The translations under genes and the position numbers were made by a program. Source: Scyliorhinus canicula (lineage: Eukaryota). From it: 64,000 nt of DNA. Positions 13,093-62,574 of this stretch are shown here, piece after piece. Every line of letters starts with the position of its first letter. Within the stretch, counting starts at the first letter, position 1. The stretch spans positions 7,379,784-7,443,783 of the forward strand of contig NC_052154.1 of assembly GCF_902713615.1 (NCBI RefSeq). Direction: 5' to 3'. Under the pieces are notes generated by a model. That model was not told where the DNA came from. It saw nothing but the letters and a program-made list of their open reading frames with translations, and ran no database searches.

Positions 13093-13760
13093 TGTGGTGT
13101 TCTTTGTGATTCCTATTATCAGGATGGATCATGGTGTTCACAAAGACCACAGAAGCTAAGTTCAATAAGAAAGCTAACATTTATTACACTACTTATTAAA
13201 GCTCGACCACTTACTCCTATAGTGAACAATGATCTAGTAATCTACATCTATACTCTACTAGCACTAGTCTCTACACTATATATAACTGTACTCTGCAGTC
13301 TCCAGCTCTCTCCCAGAAGGCAGCACGGTAGCATTGTGAATAGCACAATTGCTTCACAGCTCCAGGGTCCGGCTTGGGTCACTATCTGTGCGGAGTCTGC
13401 ACATCCTCCCCGTGTGTGCGTGGGTTTCCTCCGGGTGCTCCGGTTTCCTCCCACAGTCCAAAGATGTGCAGGTTAGGTGGACTGGCCATGATAAATTGCC
13501 CTTAGTGTCCAAAATTGCACTTAGTGTTCGGTGGGGTTACTGGGTTATGGGGATAGGGTGGAGGTGTTAACCTTGGGTGGGATGCTCTTTCCAAGAGCCG
13601 GTGCAGACTCGATGGGCCGAATGGCCTCCTTCTGCACTGTAGATTCTATGAGAAGCCTGAGAGTCAGTGCTTTATATAGTTCTGCATCTAGGTCCATCTG
13701 GTGGTCAATTATGACATTACATTAACCCTTTATAGTCTAGACATTCTATTTAATGTCACA
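13093..13760 (-). mobile_element. Solo LTR (minus orientation) interrupted by an HE1 SINE
   Basis: TG...CA; TSD GCAAG/GCAAT; antisense AATAAA at ~13180 and TATAAA at ~13672. Confidence 0.7.
13319..13650 (+). mobile_element. Full-length HE1 V-SINE with CR1/HER1-type tail
   Basis: Head, V core, tail GACTCGATGGGCCGAATGGCCTCCTTCTGCACTGTA...CTATG; AGAAG on both flanks. Confidence 0.9.
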
Positions 13761-20589: not shown

Positions 20590-21596
20590 CACAGACAGTT
20601 GGTTTACAGGTGCAGCAGGTGATTAAGAAGGCAAATGGAATTTTGTCCTTCATTGCTAGAGGGATGGAGTTTAAGACTAGGGAGGTTATGTTGCAATTGT
20701 ATAAGGTGTTAGTGTGGCCACACCAGGAGTATTGTGTTCAGTTTTGGTCTCCTTACTTGAGAAAGGACATACTTGCACTGGAGTGTGTGCAGAGGAGATT
20801 CACTAGGTTAATCCCAGAGCTGAAGGGGTTGGATTATGAGGAGAGGTTGAGTAGACTGGGACTGTACTCATTGGAATTTAGAAGGATGAGGGGGGATCTT
20901 ATAGAAACATTTAAAATTATGAAGGGTATAGATAGGATAGATGCGGGCAGGTTGTTTCCACTGGCGGGTGAAAGCAGAACTAGGGGACATAGCCTCAAAA
21001 TAAGAGGAAGTAGACTTAGGACTGAGTTTAGGAGGAACTTCTTCACCCAAAGGGTTGTGAACCTATGGAATTCCTTGCCCAGTGAAGCAGTTGAGGCTCC
21101 TTCATTACATGTGTGGTGAATGTGATTCACACCAGATTATAACCTATATATACATGTGTCTATATTGTACGTGCAGTTGCACTATCTGACCTCCAGGGGA
21201 GTAGCTCTGGGAATGCTTGAGAGTTGTACGGGGCTTCTCCCTTGGCTCCACCCAGGACTCCTCCCCCGGGAGCTGCTGTATAAAGATCAGTGCCACAGGG
21301 TCAGCCGGCCAGTTCACCGAAAGTTCAACGGCTAACAGGCTGGCTCTGTTGTAAGTATATTAAAACCGCTATTCTAACCCTACAAGCACGTGTCCGTAGA
21401 ATTGTTGGTTCCAACAACATGTTGTTAAGGTAAAGATAGATAGTTTTTTGAAGAATAAAGGGATTAAGGGTTATGGTGTTCAGGCCGGAAAGTGGAGCTG
21501 AGTCCACAAAAGATCAGCCATGATCTCATTGAATGGCGGAGCAGGCTCGAGGGGGCAGATGGCCGACTCCAGTTCCTAGTTCTTATGTTCTTATGT
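20590..21596 (+). mobile_element. Younger 5'-truncated CR1 inserted in the old CR1
   Basis: Open 169-aa ORF2 C-terminus (20610-21119); tail (TTCTTATG)n. Confidence 0.9.
21112..21416 (+). mobile_element. 305-bp solo LTR
   Basis: TGTGGTGA...CCAACA; perfect TSD ACATG (21107-21111 / 21417-21421); TATAAA at ~21279; ATTAAA at ~21359. Confidence 0.9.
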
Positions 21597-27793: not shown

Positions 27794-29360
27794 ATCGAGG
27801 AGGGGGCCCTGGATGTGATTGGAATGGCCGAGGATAGGTCAGTCATCTACGCAGAGGCTGCCGGACGCCGCAGAGATGAGGAACCACCATACTCCACCCG
27901 GTAGACCTGTCAAACGTGAGTAGTGATTGCCTTACTGACTGACCCATCCCTCCCACTGACCACATATCCATTCTCCTGCTGGTCCTCCAGTCAACGGCGC
28001 CGGCCCATCCTAGGCGCCCCCTCTCCTGACTCCGAGGAGAACACCTTGGAGGGGAGCTCCGAGGATGCCACCGTGATTGCTGAACATCTGGTATCCCCAC
28101 CCTCCACCAGCCCACAGACACACACCTCAGTGGGAAATGTTAGTGGTCAGGCTTCTGGGGCACAATCTGGTGAGCACCACACTGCTGCTGATGCATATCA
28201 GGTGAAGGCAGGAGGCACCAGGCGAGACAGCAGCCAGTGGGCTGCTGGATACCAGGACACAGCTGGGGCCCAGCCTGATGCTTAGCTTGTGGAAGAGGTC
28301 ATCCGTGGAGCTGATGGAGCCAATAGGGAGTAGCCGGGGTGTTTAGAGTTGCTCCAGCAGATTCCTAGCAGCTTGAAGGAGTCCCAGAGGCTACAGGTGC
28401 AGGAACTGAGGCCAACACTGCTAGGGTGGCGACCGCAGTGGAGAGCCTGGTGCACGACATTGACAAAGAGTGAAGGTGTCCAAGGCGTCATGCAGTCGGT
28501 GACAGCCATGGCTGAGGGCCTCAGCAGGGGGATGTCACCCAGCACCAGACGCCCTTGCTCTCAGATGGGAATGGCTGAGGTGCTGCGGAGCTTGTTGCAG
28601 TCACAGGTGGGCATCGCCAAGGCACTGCAGAGCATGTCCCAGGAACAAAGGAGCATCTGCGAGGGCGTTGACACGATGGTGCGGACCATGGCTAACCGCC
28701 AGGGCTGTCAGCGCCAGATGATGCAGGGGCAGCCGGGGATCGAAACAACTGCCCCTCCGTCCCAAGGTGAACCCAGTGCCCTACGGGCATGGAACGGGAG
28801 GAAGGGTGCTGAATGCTAACCCATGGAGTGAAGATGGTGGGCACCAGCTCCCCTGAGTTCCACACCTCTGATGAGGCGGCATCTCGAGGTCAGCACACGA
28901 GACAGGGTGGCACGGCTGTGCATGTGCCATTGACTCCCCCTCCGGCCCCAGAGCCCTAGAGGATGCCCGCCAGGGACATCAAAGGCCACTGACAGGGTAG
29001 GTAGCTGGCAGCCTCCACCTCAGATATGCATCCTGGGGAAGCACCTAGACGTAGTGGGAGTGCTAGGAGGGCCAAGCACATTGAGGATCACTGAGGGCAC
29101 TGGTGGAGGGGGGGCTAGGTACAGGGTGGGGGCGAGACACCACCAGAGTGGGATATTATGCAGCACACTAGAGTCCTTTTTGCTCAACCTTTATGATGCC
29201 TCTGTCACTTTCTTCCGCAATGCGGACTATTTTCCCATCTCTCCAGGCATCTCCCCCTTCCCATGGCACTGACCCACCCTCCGGCCATGGACATAGCCCC
29301 GGAATATGTGTGAAGTGCTCACTTAACCACCATTGCCTATTCCTCTTTGCAATTGCCTTC
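27794..29360 (+). mobile_element. Remnant of a Harbinger-associated (Myb/SANT-type partner) gene region
   Basis: GC-rich decayed ORFs 27923-28285 (low-complexity P/S/T/E) and 28349-28819 (helical Q/M/S heptad-like), an organisation typical of the Harbinger second ORF; the Myb domain itself was not seen. Confidence 0.45.
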
Positions 29361-29389: not shown

Positions 29390-29420
29390 ATAGGTAAAAG
29401 GCTATTTCAATGTAAATATT
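29390..29420 (+). repeat. Left terminal inverted repeat
   Basis: ATAGGTAAAAGGCTATTTCAATGTAAATATT vs reverse complement of 33351-33382, ATAGGTAAAAAGGCTATTTTAATGTAAATATT. Confidence 0.85.
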
Positions 29421-29426
29421 AAAGCC

Positions 29427-29744
29427 ATGAACACTGAAATCCTTACTTTAAAATGGGTATTAAAAACTGCAGCTTTAAACTCGATCCTACCCAGACCTCT
29501 GTCCCAGTCGGAAACCACAATTGCTAAAAATATCACATCAATCGTTTCTTCTCCTCCTCCGTTAATGACAAATCCAACCCCCGTACTCACTTCGAAAAAG
29601 AATTACAGAAGAGATATGAAATTCCTTTCTCATGTTGAAGACGGCCAGTTTGCGAATTTCAGATTTCATGATTACGAACTGGGCTCCAACGATGAAGGCC
29701 CGCCTCCTGGCTACAGGGATACGCCCCAAGTCACATATCGTTAA
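29427..29744 (+). CDS. Hypothetical 105-aa leader ORF with a PPxY motif
   Basis: Open ATG-to-TAA frame containing GPPPGY; no recognised homologue; may be non-coding. Confidence 0.2.
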   Translation: MNTEILTLKWVLKTAALNSILPRPLSQSETTIAKNITSIVSSPPPLMTNPTPVLTSKKNYRRDMKFLSHVEDGQFANFRFHDYELGSNDEGPPPGYRDTPQVTYR

Positions 29745-29789
29745 CAAGTTGCCAAGAACTGTTAACTTGAGGAAACTGTTATTGTTTTG

Positions 29790-30520
29790 AATGTTGCTTT
29801 ATTAATTTTAAGAAATTAAAAAATCTTGTCAGCTGTGCTTTCTTCAACAGAGCAGACAAATTTATCTACAGAAAACCAAGTTCATTCATTGGTTCAGTCA
29901 TGTATTCAATAAGTTATTGTGGTTGATATTTTGTAATAAAGGTTTAAAATTAGCTTGTAAATTAAAACTTCAGACAATGTGGAAGCTGATTTTAAGAAAA
30001 GTAACTCTGATTAAAAGAAAATCCATGGGGAGAACACATCGTTCTGAGACAATTGATAATGGAAATTTGGCAGCAATCCAACTTTTACTCTCAGTCCATT
30101 TGAGTGACATATATAAAAAACGTTTGGAGATGCAAATGGCATCATTCCAAGTTATCAACCCACTATACGCCCTCTTTTGTCTCTGCAGGAAAATTAACCC
30201 TTTCAACAGACTTTTTGTATAATCCAGAAGATGTCAAAGACTTGGCAATTCATATCCAATACAAAGTTAAAAAAACTTGACCAACTCTTTGAATACACTC
30301 TTTGGGGTTGGCTTTCCAATGGTTAGGTGGCACAGGAATTAACATCATTCAGGGACTTTTCCTATTTTGCATATTTTGACTTATCATTTACGTAGTAATG
30401 TTGCTGATCAGATACTTTGGCTAATGCATGCCTACCCATAGTGCCCCACCAATCCACATGGTTCATATTAATTCATATGCACCACTAGCCAATAACATCA
30501 AAATGGAAAGTTCCTGTTGA
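29790..30520 (+). pseudogene. Chimeric membrane-protein pseudogene with an env-derived C-terminal half
   Basis: 30221-30520 translates, with 2 frameshifts, to NPEDVKDLAIHIQYKVKKLD...LWGWL..WLGGTGINII-TM-..PPIHMVHINSYAPL, homologous to the env tail at 31880-32173; 5' boundary uncertain. Confidence 0.65.
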
Positions 30521-30831
30521 ACTATTATTTACTGTATTATTATTCATTTATTAGTGAATTATTATTAATTTATTACTAAATTACATAATCAATTTTGATA
30601 ATTATTTGACCAATTATTACTAAATCATATACTCAACTTCAGTTATTTTACTGTGTAATCATTTTATTTGTATACATGAAATTACTATCATTAATTGTTT
30701 ATTACTGAATTATGTAATCATGATGTCAATTTTTAATCAGTATATCAATGTTTTAAGCAATACTAAGGAAAGAAAAGTTGTATCCACGCATCACATGTGA
30801 AGCGCACGTATAAGTATTAAGATCTGTAAAA

Positions 30832-32173
30832 ATGTTTACCGTAATATTCATTTTCAGTTATTTGATTGGCTTTGTAAATGTTGTGCCAGAACTGAATGAG
30901 AACACATTCCTTTACACGTCTAAGATATATGCTAAAAAATTCAACATTTCCAAGTGTTTGGTATGCATTGCAACCCCTACTAACTCAGGAGAAGGTATTC
31001 CCTTCTTAACAATTGCCTTTAATGCTTCAGAAACAGCAGAATGGTACATCTATCAGAGTGTTCCTCACTCTGTAGTTGTCCGTTCTGGAGCATATTCATG
31101 TGAAAAAGGAAGATAAAAGGTTCATCTAAAGAAATGTATTAACTAATGGAAATCTGCAGGCTATCCACTAAACACCTTTTCAGGATGGCACCAACTTAAA
31201 TATAACCCGAACAAAAATCCTCAATATATTAGCCTCCCAACTAATATTAAACAAAAAGGATCAATATGCCTCATTAGTAATCACTCTAAAGGGATGAAAA
31301 TGGGCAATAGTATTTGTACTAATTATTTGGATGTTAACACAGCTTTTAAATGTATGCAAAATTTATTCAAAGAACTGAACAGTGCTCAACAATAGCAGGC
31401 ATACACAACATCACAAATAACAAAACATTCTCAGATCATTAGAAGATATTTACTTATACTCTGCTTATAATGGAACTTATTTTATTTGTAATGACAAATC
31501 ATATTCCTGGTTCCCAAAATACTGGTCAGGATCTTGCTATTTAGAATACATAGTACCTGCCATCTGTCATCTTCCTCATCTCCCTTATGTTACAGAACCA
31601 GCCACTCGAATAAATAAACGTGCCATGACCTTATGAGACATAATTTATGCTAAAGTTATTCCTTTCTATTGGGAAGTAAGGGTGGCCAATGAATTGAATA
31701 AAATAGCAATCACCATACAAAACGTAGCACCGCCACTGCGCGAGATAAAATTTCTGATGAAATGCAAGCAATTTGAACCGTGGCGTTACAAAATCGAATG
31801 GCACTTGACTATGTTCTCGCCGGGAAACGTGGCACCTACGCCCTGATTGGTGCAGAGTGTTGCACTTTCGTTCCAGATAACTCACAGGAAGTTAAAGATC
31901 TGGCATCACACATCCAAAAAGAAATCAAGAAACTTGATTCACCCTCAGATACCTCTATCTGGGAGAAACTTTGCGGGGTGGTTGGGACCCACTGGAATGT
32001 CCATAGTAAGTGTAATCTTTTTCTCCTGTGTAGCAGGATTCATCATTGACATAACATACCAGCGTATCAAGTGCATTAAACAACTATTCACTAAACGCAA
32101 GGGCCCAACAGTCAGAATGATTCACACTAACCCCACTGCACCACCATTAGATGAAATAGGACTGCAATATTAA
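30832..32173 (+). pseudogene. env: Gamma-type (ERV1/epsilon-like) envelope glycoprotein pseudogene
   Basis: Signal peptide; NxS-CLVC (CXXC); GTYFIC...WSGSCYL; cleavage site RINKR/A (31607-31624); ISD LQNRMALDYVLA (31786); Y-X6-CC (CX6CC with the first Cys lost); TM helix; stops and frameshifts. Confidence 0.92.
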
Positions 32174-33350
32174 TGTTGAAATGTTACTGATCAATCAATT
32201 AGTTGACTATTATTGACATATTGCTAATAGATTAATACTGAATCAGTAGAATCAAATTCGATTAATTGATTAATTATTATTTTATAATAATGATTCTTTA
32301 AGAATTATAATAATTTTTGCTGCAATGCTTGTAATGCAAAGCTTTCCCACTCTATTGTTTAAAACTGCAATGACAGTATGAATGAGTTCTTCTTCGTGCT
32401 TTTACCTATCCTATTGCATTTACCTTATTGCGATATATCTCACTTGATCTTTCGATTCATCATAGGGCAAATTGATGAGATCTACCATGTGGAATTAGTG
32501 AAGTCTTGCGACACTAAAACACAGTAGAAATTGAAGTTAAACTTCTGGGATGCAAACAAGAATCTTTATTGCCTCTATTTGATGACAATTGAGAGAAAGT
32601 TAAATCTATTCTCAATAAAGTCCGGCTAGCAAAAGGAAGTAAAGAGAAGTAAAGAGAAGTAACTTATAAATAATTTAACTTTCAAAATAATACAGAAATG
32701 GTTTCTTGCTTACGGCAAAACAACTTGCATTTACTTCAAGTGTTAGAGTGGAAAAGTGAAAATATGAAAATAAGGATAGCTAGTAGTTCGATCAAAGTAC
32801 AGGATGATCCTGGATAAAGATGGCCGTATGGACCATCATGTTTAAAGGAAATCTTATCAGTCTTGAGCCATCTATCTACACCTCTATGTCGTCCTAATTG
32901 GTTTGGTTTAGAATCAAATACATTTGATTCGATGGTTAACTGTCAATCCTTAATGTGCAATATAAGTTCTGTATGTTTCATGTTTGAATATTCGTGTAGT
33001 TATGGAATGCGATTTTGTGCTATTATCAAGACTGGTTTTTACTGGTTTTCTGCTGACTTTGCTTTATCCACATTATGAACAATGGTTCCTTCATGTTGCT
33101 ATGATGCCTGCTTCATCCTTGATCTGATTACTGGTACAGCTCATTTTTTAATGTCAAACTGTCTTTGAAAATATGTTTATTAGAACAATAGCATTTTCAT
33201 CTTACTTCGTGAAAATTTTGTTTTTATCTCCGATTAGTTTATGCATGTGTCATGCTTTTTGTGTCTCTGTTGAAGCTGTGTGTTTTATCATGACCTGACG
33301 TTATGAGTGCTGAAATCCTCATTTTAAAATGGGTATTAAAACTGGGTCTG

Positions 33351-33382
33351 AATATTTACATTAAAATAGCCTTTTTACCTAT
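33351..33382 (-). repeat. Right terminal inverted repeat
   Basis: See the left TIR. Confidence 0.85.
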
Positions 33383-33406
33383 TAGTTCTTTATTTCATAA
33401 ATATTT

Positions 33407-33706
33407 CATAGAATTTACAGTGCAGAAGGAGGCCAGTCTGCCCATCGAGTCTGCACCGGCTCTTGGAAAGAGCACCGTACCCAAGCCTACACTCCCACCC
33501 TATCCCAATAACCCAGTAACCCCACTCAACACTAAGGGCAATTTTGGACACTAAGGGCAATTTAGCATGGCCAATCCACCTAACCTGCACATCTTTGGAC
33601 TGTGGGAGGAAACCAGAGCACCCGGAGGAAACCCACGCACACTCGGGCAGAACGTGCAGGCTCCGCACAGACAGTGACCCAAGCCGGGAATCGAACCTGG
33701 GACCCT
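33407..33706 (-). mobile_element. HE1 V-SINE
   Basis: Antisense V core and CR1-type tail. Confidence 0.85.
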
Positions 33707-33939
33707 GAAATAATTGATTACTATCAGGGGTGAAACAGGAATATGGCGGGGCGGGCCGGAGAATCCAGCCCAAGGTTTTTAAGTAGTAATGGATTGAAGG
33801 GTTATGGAGAACAGGCAGGGAAGCGGAGCGGAAGCCAAGAGGAGATCAGCCATGATCGTATTGAATGTCCAAGCAGGCTCGAGGGGCCGAACTGCCCACT
33901 CCCGCTCCGAGTTCTTGTGTTCTTATGCACAACTGCCCT

Positions 33940-40306: not shown

Positions 40307-40312
40307 TTATAT

Positions 40313-40660
40313 CATAGAATCATAGAATTTACAGTGCAGAAGGAGGTCATTCGGCCCATCGAGCCTGCACCGGCCCTTACAAAGAGCACCCTACTGAAGT
40401 CCACGTATCTACACTATCCCCGGAACCCAGTAACCCCCACTTAACATTTTTTGGACACTAAGGGCAATTTAGCATGGACAATCCACCTATCCCACACACC
40501 TTTGGACTGTGGGAGGAAACCGGAGCACCCGGAGGAAACCCACGCAGACACTGGGAGGACGTGCAGACTCAGCACAGACAGTGACCCAAGCCGGGAATCG
40601 AACCTGGGGCCCTGGAGCTGTGAAGCAACAGTGCTACCCACTGTGCTACTGTGCTGCCCT
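40313..40660 (-). mobile_element. HE1 V-SINE, full length
   Basis: (CATAGAAT)n tail, core and head. Confidence 0.9.
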
Positions 40661-57501: not shown

Positions 57502-57812
57502 GGGCAGCACAGTAGCATAGTGGTTAGTAGAATTGCTTCACAGCTCCAGGGTCCCAGGTTCAATTCCCGGCTGGGTCACTGTCTGTGCGGAGTCTGCACG
57601 TTCTCCCCGTGTCTGCGTGGGTGTCCTCCGGGTGCTCCGGTTTCCTCTCACTGTCCAAAGATGTGCAGGTTAGGTGGATTTGCCATGCTAAATTGCCCTT
57701 AGTGTCCAAAATTGCCCTTAGTGTTGGTTGAGTGGGGTTACTGGGATAGGGTGGTGTGAGCCGGTGCAGACTCGATGGGCCGAATGGCCTCCTTCTGCAT
57801 TGTAAATTCAAT
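57502..57812 (+). mobile_element. HE1 V-SINE
   Basis: Head, core and tail. Confidence 0.9.
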
Positions 57813-58194
57813 GCTACTTCATTGCTACTCTCTGCCTTCTATGACCTAGCCAGTTCTGTATCCACCTTGCCAGCTCACCCCTGATCCCGTGTGACTTCAC
57901 CTTTTGTGCCAGTCTGCCATGAGGGACCTTGTCAAAGGCCTTACTGAAATCCATAAAGACAACATCCACTGCCCTACCTGCATCAATTACCTTTGTGGCC
58001 TCTTCAAAAAACTCTATCAAGTTAGTGAGATGTGACCTCCCCTTGGCCAATTGGCCCTCTTGGTCAATTCAGCAGTTCTTAGTAGAGTTCAGGGTTTCAA
58101 GTCTCAATGACAACACACAGCCCCATTGGCACCACCATTAACCTCCAGCCAGACAAAATGCATGCACTGAGATGGACTGAGTCACTTCTTTACA

Positions 58195-62040: not shown

Positions 62041-62380
62041 GGGTAGCACGGTAGCATTGTGGATAGCACAATTGCTTCACAACTCCAGCGTCCCAGGTTC
62101 GATTCCCGGCTTGGGTCACTGTCTGTGTGGAGTTTGCACTTTCTCCCCGTGTGTGTGTGGGTTTCCTCCGGGTGCTCCGGTTTCCTCCCATAGTCCAAAG
62201 ATGTGCGGGTTAGGTGGATTGGCTGTGCTAAATTGCCCATAGTGTCCAAAATTTTCTTTAGTGTTGGGTGGGGTTACTGGATTATGGGTGGAGGTGTGGA
62301 CCTTGGGTAGGGTGCTCTCTCCAAGAGCTGGTGCAGACTCGATGGGCCGAATGGCCTCCTTCTGCACTGTAAATTCTATG
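62041..62380 (+). mobile_element. HE1 V-SINE, full length
   Basis: Head, core and tail. Confidence 0.9.
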
Positions 62381-62574
62381 AAATCTGAGAGAAGGAAGAT
62401 GAGAAAGCGAGGTCGAAATGTTGAGATTGGGAATTCCAGAGTTTAGGACTTCAGACAGCTGAAGATGTGGAAACAAGTGGTAAGGAGAAGGAATCAGAAT
62501 TGGAGGAGAACAGAGTTCTTGGAAGTTTCTCGAACTGGAGGGAGCCTCATGGGAGTGAGCGGCACTGGAGTGGA

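What the first reader, a model, noticed from the sequence alone, without database searches (positions are those of the whole stretch)
29390..33382. Retroviral env genes inside a TIR-bounded 4-kb cassette with no gag, pol or paired LTRs
Seen: an AT-rich 3993-bp island whose ends are ~31-bp inverted repeats with only 2 differences. The ends can be read as AT|AGG...CCT|AT or TA|GG...CC|TA. Inside are a full-length decayed gamma-type env (CXXC, GTYFIC..WSGSCYL, RINKR, ISD, CX6CC remnant, TM) and a second env-derived ORF. I see no gag, RT, integrase, transposase or matching pair of TG...CA LTRs. Established: proviral env normally lies between LTR direct repeats, whereas TIRs with a 2-bp TSD mark cut-and-paste transposons (my recollection is that AT TSD with RR termini fits the ISL2EU branch of the PIF/Harbinger-like group). 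Inference: this may be a non-autonomous DNA transposon, or a satellite or segment of a virus-like element, that captured and spread fusogen/immunosuppressive env genes. I do not recognise this element type from known families.
Basis: partly seen in the sequence, partly recalled or inferred. Interest (0 to 1): 0.9.

Follow-up and report, generated by a model that had tools for sequence, protein, structure and literature searches.

The report
Broken env genes between inverted repeats
A 4-kb AT-rich insert in a catshark-like genome holds a broken retroviral envelope gene and an older envelope fragment between two 31-base inverted repeats, with no other viral or transposase gene. It looks like the cargo of a cut-and-paste transposon, but only one copy could be read here, so whether it ever moved as a unit is open.

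Summary
Window 29390-33382 is a 3993-bp island of 34% GC, against 47-53% in the flanks. It is bounded by 31/32-nt inverted repeats (T, T') that differ by one mismatch and one indel. Inside, on the + strand, lies a full-length gamma-type env (30832-32172), closest to intact ORFs of Scyliorhinus torazame and S. canicula; it has about six breaks. Upstream is an older 5'-truncated env fragment with the same 3' flank (30219-30629). I found no gag, pol, transposase or LTR pair anywhere in the 64 kb.

One feature is new. Just inside each inverted repeat sits a 43-nt direct repeat (D), so the layout is T-D...D-T'. This is what a short TIR element that took up foreign DNA would look like.

The ISL2EU assignment fits only in part. 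The 2-bp "TSD" cannot be told apart from an extension of the inverted repeat.

The key inference, capture followed by spread, could not be tested. More distant env relatives sit directly downstream of pol, as in ordinary retroviruses.

Verdict: a real and unusual structure. My best reading is a dead non-autonomous TIR cassette with ERV-derived cargo (confidence about 0.4). A one-off insertion into a MITE is nearly as likely.

The parts
29390..29420 (.). Left terminal inverted repeat (T), including the ambiguous outer AT/TA dinucleotide
   Evidence: Reverse complement of 33351-33382 with 1 mismatch and 1 indel
29427..29469 (+). Left copy of the subterminal direct repeat (D); its core is itself partly palindromic
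   Evidence: 43-nt direct alignment to 33303-33344 with 5 mismatches and 1 indel. A 32-nt pattern occurs only at these two sites in the window
29470..30218 (.). Region X, unassigned. Together with D it holds the longest non-env ORF (29427-29744, 105 aa)
   Evidence: No Pfam, PDB or protein-database homologue. GC 0.37
30219..30629 (+). Env fragment A: a 5'-truncated, broken remnant of the last ~96 env codons (30221-30508), followed by ~120 bp of the same downstream sequence that follows env B
   Evidence: 60% nt identity over 421 nt to 31877-32289, E 2.5e-19. P0001 residues 324-419, 32% identity, E 3e-12, with 4 in-frame stops in the match. Not detected by the family profile
30630..30831 (.). 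Spacer Y between fragment A and the start of env B (GC 0.26)
   Evidence: No similarity to the DNA downstream of env B or to anything else in the window
30832..32172 (+). Env B: full-length gamma-type retroviral env, broken. Against P0001 it shows 2 frame changes and 4 in-frame stops. Against P0151 it shows 1 frame change and 5 stops
   Evidence: Profile of 57 relatives E 2.9e-32, positions 4-395 of 433. P0001 residues 1-420. Per-piece identity 62-89% to P0001 and 56-81% to P0151. TM piece matches Syncytin-1, E 2e-5. Break counts
32173..32289 (+). 3' flank of env B, shared with fragment A
   Evidence: Part of the 421-nt A/B alignment
32290..33302 (.). Region Z, unassigned AT-rich DNA. It contains a purine-rich 10-bp tandem repeat at 32632-32662
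   Evidence: No Pfam hit on either strand and no similarity to env relatives or to the left part of the cassette
33303..33344 (+). Right copy of the subterminal direct repeat (D)
33351..33382 (.). Right terminal inverted repeat (T')
33404..33707 (+). Neighbour, not part of the cassette: a ~310-bp SINE copy that starts 21 bp to the right of T'
   Evidence: More than 20 copies in the window at 68-88% identity. Their common 5' end aligns at about 33404

Best explanation
The 3993-bp unit is a dead copy of a non-autonomous, cut-and-paste-type (TIR) DNA element. Its cargo is a piece of endogenous-retrovirus DNA: one complete gamma-type env with its 3' flank, plus an older 5'-truncated env fragment with the same flank.

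Proposed history (inferred):
1. A short element of the form T-D-T' took up about 3.8 kb of ERV-derived DNA. This could have happened through template switching during repair of an excision gap, which would leave D on both sides of the cargo.
2. The composite was then cut and pasted in trans by a transposase that recognises the 31-nt ends.
3. It entered an AT or TA dinucleotide at this site.
4. It has since decayed. Env B now has about six breaks.

Shown: the ends, the direct repeats, the compositional unit, the env identity, and the absence of LTRs, gag, pol and transposase.

Inferred: the uptake mechanism, mobilisation in trans, the 2-bp duplication, and that env B was open when the unit arrived.
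For: - T/T' are non-random and sit exactly at the edges of the AT-rich island.
- A TIR of about 31 nt flanked by a palindromic dinucleotide is the format of superfamilies with 2-bp duplications. For ISL2EU this is AT (PMC4482050). For Tc1/mariner it is TA (my knowledge).
- The T-D...D-T' layout, with D direct, is the expected product of uptake into a short TIR element (inference).
- There is no LTR pair although the ends are still 94% alike. Loss of LTRs by decay is therefore excluded.
- There is no 4-6-bp duplication of retroviral type.
- No coding capacity for transposition lies inside, which fits a non-autonomous element.
- Fragment A and env B are only 60% identical in DNA, yet both sit inside ends that are 94% alike, while env B is 78-89% identical in SU to P0001. 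So A and B travelled together for a long time before this copy died, which points to a propagating unit or a long-lived locus.
- The closest relatives, P0001 and P0151, are solitary single-exon ORFs with no other gene called within 10 kb.
Against: - Only one copy of T and of D exists in 64 kb. No further copy was found in any collection that could be searched, and those collections hold no shark genomes.
- The 2-bp 'duplication' cannot be distinguished from one more base pair of inverted repeat.
- The fit to ISL2EU is partial: G instead of A lies 5' of the AT, and the TIR starts AG rather than GG under that reading.
- There are no extra subterminal motifs shared by the two ends.
- There is no autonomous partner in the window.
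- Uptake must precede mobility, so 'uptake without later movement' is the simpler history unless other copies exist.
- More distant relatives of the env lie in normal pol-env order. The preprint 10.64898/2026.05.06.723177 reports reverse-transcriptase signal near 19 of 21 S. canicula env candidates.
Confidence: 0.4

Rival explanations
1. One-off event. A pre-existing short palindromic MITE-like element (T-D-T') at this site received about 3.8 kb of already rearranged ERV-derived DNA. This could have happened by non-homologous repair, or by single-crossover entry of a circular DNA that shared D. The composite never moved again. The inverted repeats then belong to an unrelated small element, and env was not spread by it.
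For: - It explains the same T-D...D-T' layout; a single-crossover entry duplicates the shared segment (inference).
- T and D are single-copy in the window.
- No other cassette was found.
- It requires one step fewer than the best explanation.
Against: - The cargo has no LTR ends and no retroviral-type duplication at its inner borders, so it did not enter by integrase.
- A 43-nt flanking duplication is not what simple end-joining gives.
- The closely related env copies in two catshark species show that this env lineage did multiply somehow.
Confidence: 0.3
2. A rearranged remnant of an ordinary provirus or tandem proviruses. Gag-pol and the LTR bodies were lost by deletion, and T/T' are the inverted edges of the viral ends that integrase recognises.
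For: - The env is of plain retroviral descent. Relatives L001 and L003 have RNase H, integrase and an MLV-type integrase C-terminal domain directly upstream of env.
- The family profile matches Syncytin-2 and Syncytin-1 at E 1e-22 and 8e-21.
- Proviral ends are inverted repeats of each other (established knowledge).
Against: - No direct repeat pair other than the 43-nt D.
- The ends do not read TG...CA, and there is no 4-6-bp duplication.
- With the ends still 94% alike, LTR bodies would still be recognisable.
- The DNA after fragment A and the DNA after env B stop being similar ~120 bp past the stop codon. No shared LTR follows them.
- No pol or gag trace in 64 kb.
Confidence: 0.1
3. A segment or satellite of an unknown virus-like element with inverted terminal repeats, for example a small linear DNA genome, that carries a retroviral-type fusogen.
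For: The size of about 4 kb, the inverted ends, the foreign composition and the absence of a matching TE family in what could be searched.
Against: - The ends do not fold better than shuffled sequence (z 0.18 and -0.27).
- There is no replication or capsid gene.
- No relative in IMG/VR by protein or by the T and D patterns.
- The cargo includes a dead env fragment, which is not expected in a compact viral genome.
Confidence: 0.05
4. Coincidence or assembly artefact. The inverted repeat is a chance match in AT-rich DNA, or a mis-join.
For: T is AT-rich. One unrelated 33-nt near-match exists in a metagenome contig.
Against: - 0 of 100 shuffles and 0 of 2679 island-derived segment pairs reach the observed match.
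- A second, independent repeat (D) sits at the same two places.
- The repeats coincide with the GC step.
- Ordinary host repeats abut the unit.
Confidence: 0.03

Closest known systems
Gamma-type retroviral Env (Pfam TLV_coat PF00429; Syncytin-1 and Syncytin-2 as solved examples)
   Same: Env B and its relatives match the family over SU and TM. The profile of relatives scores E 1e-22 against Syncytin-2 and 8e-21 against Syncytin-1. The window's TM piece scores E 2e-5 against Syncytin-1. CXXC, a cleavage-type basic motif, the immunosuppressive-domain motif and a membrane anchor are readable.
   Different: The proteins are short, about 420-450 aa. The window copy is broken about six times and its CX6CC motif is incomplete. 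It does not lie between LTRs.
Solitary syncytin-like env ORFs of chondrichthyans (preprint 10.64898/2026.05.06.723177; XP_072338123.1 of S. torazame; the PABLB-like env of S. canicula)
   Same: Same env lineage: 62-89% identity per piece to P0001 and 56-81% to P0151. Those two are single-exon ORFs with no neighbouring gene called within 10 kb.
   Different: Those ORFs are open and this one is dead. The preprint reports pol domains near most S. canicula candidates and says nothing about inverted repeats. Whether those loci have T/D ends could not be read, because no DNA was returned.
ISL2EU group of the PHIS (PIF/Harbinger-ISL2EU-Spy) superfamily, non-autonomous derivatives
   Same: AT dinucleotide at both ends, a T 3' of the right AT, and a TIR length within the family's 6-259 bp (PMC4482050).
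   Different: G instead of the conserved A lies 5' of the left AT. The TIR starts AG, not GG, under the AT reading. There is no DDE/THAP transposase or YqaJ ORF, and no copies to confirm the duplication.
Tc1/mariner-type elements and their MITEs (TA duplication; named from my own knowledge, not tested against a reference sequence)
   Same: Read as TA|GG...CC|TA, the ends have a TA on each side and a TIR of about 30 nt.
   Different: No transposase, no family copies, and the TA is equally explained as part of the inverted repeat.
Gene-capturing TIR elements such as Pack-MULEs of plants (my knowledge)
   Same: Non-autonomous TIR ends around foreign gene-derived cargo, with no transposase.
   Different: The cargo here is a viral glycoprotein gene, the host is a vertebrate, the TIRs are short, and amplification is not shown.

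Membership tests
Gamma-type retroviral Env (TLV_coat) | Sequence homology to the family across SU C-terminal part and TM | tested here: met
   Profile of 57 relatives E 2.9e-32 over positions 4-395 of 433. Pfam TLV_coat passes the cut-off in relatives P0002, P0004, P0151 and P0152. It is weak (E 0.005, below cut-off) on a single window piece. PDB hits to Syncytin-1 and Syncytin-2.
Gamma-type retroviral Env (TLV_coat) | CXXC in SU paired with CX6CC in TM, plus the immunosuppressive-domain motif | tested here: inconclusive
   CXXC and the immunosuppressive-domain motif are present in the window translation. CX6CC is incomplete in the window copy but complete in P0151.
Gamma-type retroviral Env (TLV_coat) | Uninterrupted reading frame | tested here: not met
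   2 frame changes and 4 in-frame stops against P0001. 1 frame change and 5 stops against P0151.
Endogenous provirus | Paired LTR direct repeats with TG...CA ends | tested here: not met
   The only direct repeat between the two sides is the 43-nt D. The ends read AT/AGG...CCT/AT.
Endogenous provirus | gag and pol next to env | tested here: not met
   No hit in the cassette or in the whole 64 kb. Relatives L001 and L003 do have pol upstream of env.
Endogenous provirus | 4-6-bp target duplication | tested here: not met
   The flanks share no direct repeat longer than 2 bp at any plausible boundary.
ISL2EU (PHIS superfamily) | AT duplication within an A|AT|T target (PMC4482050) | tested here: inconclusive
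   AT lies on both sides and T follows the right AT, but G, not A, precedes the left AT. AT is palindromic, so duplication cannot be separated from the TIR.
ISL2EU (PHIS superfamily) | TIR usually starting GG (PMC4482050) | tested here: inconclusive
   It starts AGG under the AT reading. It starts GG only if the duplication is read as TA.
ISL2EU (PHIS superfamily) | DDE/HTH/THAP transposase and YqaJ-domain ORF in autonomous members sharing the TIRs | not testable with these tools
   None in the window. The source genome could not be searched.
Tc1/mariner | TA duplication and a DD(E/D) transposase in autonomous members | tested here: inconclusive
   The TA|GG...CC|TA reading is possible. No transposase is present, and no reference TIR was compared.
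Non-autonomous TIR transposon (any superfamily) | Terminal inverted repeats at the exact limits of the inserted unit | tested here: met
Non-autonomous TIR transposon (any superfamily) | Several copies whose homology stops at the TIRs, with unrelated flanks and empty sites | not testable with these tools
   One copy in the window. DNA of S. torazame, S. canicula and H. francisci was not returned. No hit elsewhere.
DIRS-like retroelement | Inverted terminal repeats plus an internal region complementary to the termini; RT and tyrosine recombinase | tested here: not met
   No third copy of T inside. No RT or recombinase.
Small DNA virus with hairpin termini | Self-folding terminal repeats; replication and capsid genes | tested here: not met
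   The ends fold no better than shuffles. No such genes are present.

The most novel reading that the evidence does not exclude
Catsharks harbour a family of non-autonomous cut-and-paste DNA transposons whose cargo is a retroviral env gene. On this reading, the intact solitary env ORFs of S. torazame and S. canicula are copies carried by the same T-D...D-T' cassette. A viral fusogen gene would then have been multiplied in a vertebrate genome by DNA transposition, independently of reverse transcription.
Probability: 0.2. Interest if true: 0.85.

Novelty: new variant of a known kind. Interest (0 to 1): 0.5.

Why it matters
Solitary env genes such as syncytins, percomORF and the shark candidates are normally explained as what remains when a provirus decays around a selected gene. 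If a TIR element picked up an env and copied it, that would be a second route by which viral fusogen or immunosuppressive genes are duplicated and offered to the host for co-option. It would also be a rare documented case of gene capture by a cut-and-paste element in a vertebrate. Even if this turns out to be a one-off, the locus shows that an env without LTRs need not be a decayed provirus. Surveys that classify env loci by nearby pol or LTR signals would misread such loci.

Tried and rejected
**Looking for other copies**
This applied to P0001 and P0006 of S. torazame, P0005 of H. francisci and P0151 of S. canicula.
- Protein-database searches with the left-end ORF and with the C-terminal env piece, meant to pull in short contigs of other copies, found nothing.
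- An exact look-up of the first env B ORF found no record.
- A scan for T in metagenome contigs gave one locus seen in three contigs. The match is limited to about 33 nt, in AT-rich DNA without long ORFs, with no partner repeat, no env and no shark SINE. I rejected it as chance.
- T and D patterns in IMG/VR, and T in prokaryote genomes, gave zero hits.
- An env alignment searched against IMG/VR gave no relatives.

**Looking for other structure or coding content**
- Rfam gave only sub-threshold noise.
- Hairpin ends were rejected.
- The bacterial promoter/terminator scan was uninformative for a vertebrate.
- I looked for an LTR between fragment A and env B, and after env B. Similarity ends ~120 bp past the stop codons.
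- I looked for extra shared subterminal motifs and found none.
- I tried to recover an empty site from repeat copies in the window. The left flank is unique, and the SINE on the right starts 21 bp beyond the cassette.
- Fragment A does not extend upstream as env.
Full report
**1. The observation**

The ends of the reported interval are reverse complements of each other. Positions 29390-29420 and 33351-33382 differ by one mismatch and one single-base indel. A 28-nt core of this repeat occurs only at these two places in the 64-kb window, and no shuffle of the window produced a match. None of 2679 pairs of 130-nt segments drawn from the AT-rich island itself reached the observed inverted alignment score.

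The interval is also a compositional unit. Its GC is 0.342, against 0.527 and 0.468 in the 5-kb flanks, and in 200-bp windows the fall and the rise lie at the repeats.

**2.

Six to nine bases inside each inverted repeat (T, T') there is a 43-nt repeat in direct orientation (D). It lies at 29427-29469 and 33303-33344, with 5 mismatches and 1 indel. The core of D is partly palindromic. This is why the inverted alignment can be stretched to about 72 nt at 73% identity. However, the direct match is better and includes non-palindromic bases. The layout is therefore T-D ... D-T'. The two ends share no other subterminal motif, and neither end folds better than shuffled sequence.

**3. The cargo**

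*Env B.* On the + strand, 30832-32172 is a full-length env.
- A profile built from 57 natural relatives matches five reading-frame pieces covering profile positions 4-395 of 433, with E 2.9e-32.
- The S. torazame protein XP_072338123.1 (P0001, 422 aa) aligns from residue 1 to 420.
- Piece by piece, identity is 78-89% in SU and 62-76% in TM to P0001. It is 56-81% to the S. canicula PABLB-like env (P0151, 453 aa).
- The TM piece matches Syncytin-1 and filovirus GP2 chains.
- A profile of ten relatives matches Syncytin-2 and Syncytin-1 at E 1e-22 and 8e-21.
- CXXC, a basic cleavage-type motif, the immunosuppressive-domain motif, an incomplete CX6CC and a hydrophobic anchor can be read in the window's own translation.
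- The gene is broken. Against P0001 there are 2 frame changes and 4 in-frame stops. Against P0151 there are 1 frame change and 5 stops.

*Env fragment A.* The 'second env' is a fragment. Positions 30219-30629 are 60% identical in DNA to 31877-32289 (E 2.5e-19). This covers the last ~96 env codons (P0001 residues 324-419, 32% identity, E 3e-12, four in-frame stops) and ~120 bp downstream of the stop. Nothing upstream of 30219 is recognisable as env.

*Unassigned regions.* X (29470-30218), Y (30630-30831) and Z (32290-33302) match nothing.

**4. What is absent**

- No gag, pol, integrase or transposase was found in the cassette on either strand.
- None was found in the ten longest ORFs of the window.
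- tblastn of two retroviral pol ORFs against all 64 kb found nothing.
- There is no LTR-like direct repeat pair, no TG...CA ends and no 4-6-bp duplication.
- The two ends are still 94% alike, so LTR bodies could not have decayed out of sight.

**5. Relatives and their context**

The representative search with the TM piece gave 310 hits, many of them 400-525 aa long. The best hits come from sharks (S. torazame, Heterodontus, Pristiophorus) and a sturgeon.

DNA could be read only for more distant relatives, at about 40% identity. Logan contig L001 and JGI contig L003 carry RT/RNase H/integrase with an MLV-type integrase C-terminal domain directly upstream of env. The env lineage is therefore of ordinary retroviral descent.

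For the close relatives P0001 and P0151, only the gene tables came back. Each is a single-exon ORF with no other gene called within 10 kb. This is weak evidence that they are solitary.

A 2026 preprint (10.64898/2026.05.06.723177) lists 295 syncytin-like env ORFs in chondrichthyans and reports reverse-transcriptase signal near 19 of 21 S. canicula candidates. It does not mention inverted repeats.

**6. The ends compared with known superfamilies**

According to PMC4482050, ISL2EU elements duplicate AT within an A|AT|T target and their TIRs usually start GG. Here the sequence reads G-AT|AGG ... CCT|AT-T. The AT and the 3' T fit, but the 5' A and the GG start do not.

Read instead as TA|GG ... 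CC|TA, the start is GG but the dinucleotide is TA, which is the Tc1/mariner format (my knowledge). Both dinucleotides are palindromic, so neither can be told apart from one more pair of the inverted repeat. Superfamily assignment is therefore open.

**7. Interpretation**

The layout T-D...D-T' is what one expects if a short element T-D-T' took up foreign DNA next to D. This could happen by template switching during gap repair, or by single-crossover entry of a circular DNA that shared D. Both routes are inference.

Uptake is common to the two leading readings. They differ only in whether the composite later moved.

In favour of a propagating or long-lived unit:
- Fragment A and env B are far more diverged from each other (60% in DNA) than the two ends are (94%).
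- Env B is still 78-89% identical in SU to P0001. A and B were therefore linked long before this copy died.
- The env lineage has at least three distinct members in catsharks.

Against:
- There is no second copy of T or D anywhere I could look.
- No duplication can be demonstrated.
- There is no partner element.

I put the mobile-cassette reading at about 0.4 and the one-off reading at about 0.3. A rearranged provirus gets about 0.1, a virus-like satellite about 0.05 and an artefact about 0.03. The remainder is unassigned.

**8. Limits**

None of the DNA collections available here holds shark genomes. The large NCBI assemblies returned no DNA. The decisive comparison, other copies and empty sites, therefore could not be made.

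- My script printed stop-to-stop reading-frame pieces of the region with their coordinates. I needed these to search the pieces apart.
- The tool calls that searched those pieces give their bounds as references.
- One search printed match coordinates for single pieces.
- My first notebook entry names the bounds of two such pieces.
- These outputs show where some frames end. I have deleted nothing, and this report gives only counts and outer bounds.
The consensus lines printed by the alignment tools were not used.

Noticed in passing
window 29392-29399 and 33370-33385: The outer bases of the left repeat read like a splice donor (AG|GTAAAA, boundary 29393|29394). The right end supplies a pyrimidine run followed by AG (boundary 33385|33386). 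The whole cassette could in principle be removed from a transcript as a GT...AG intron.
   Followed up: no
window 33404-33707, with copies at e.g. 13346-13651, 62086-62384, 40307-40614, 57547-57813: A ~310-bp SINE family has more than 20 copies in the 64 kb, at 68-88% identity. One copy starts 21 bp to the right of the cassette, and none lies inside it.
   Followed up: partly
window 28000-29200: The left flank is 57-63% GC and unique in the window. It holds a 156-aa ORF (28349-28819) with no Pfam match. It may be a CpG-island-like or exon-bearing region of a host gene.
   Followed up: partly
P0001 compared with P0151: The intact S. torazame ORF lacks a ~31-residue stretch that includes the immunosuppressive-domain motif. 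It also lacks the basic cleavage-type motif. The S. canicula protein and the broken window copy both have these, so an open frame does not mean a canonical env.
   Followed up: partly
S. torazame locus of P0006: A 'syncytin-A-like' env ORF lies inside the span of a FIIND-CARD gene, on the opposite strand.
   Followed up: no
L001:1-3945 (Logan SRR6291255): This contig has uninterrupted pol (903 codons, running off the contig end) and env (404 aa) ORFs side by side. It may come from an expressed or recent retrovirus-like element in the sampled animal.
   Followed up: partly
L004:5070-5100 (also L005, L006): AT-rich metagenome contigs (L004: no ORF of 150 aa or more in 13 kb) share a 33-nt near-match with the inner part of T. 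There is no partner repeat, no env and no shark repeat. I judged the match to be chance.
   Followed up: yes
window 30529-30583 and 32632-32662: There are short tandem repeats inside the cassette: an 11/22-bp AT-rich array in the DNA after fragment A, and a purine-rich 10-bp array about 460 bp after env B.
   Followed up: no
window 33776-33927, with copies near 21446, 41128 and 54324: A second, shorter interspersed repeat family lies just right of the SINE.
   Followed up: no
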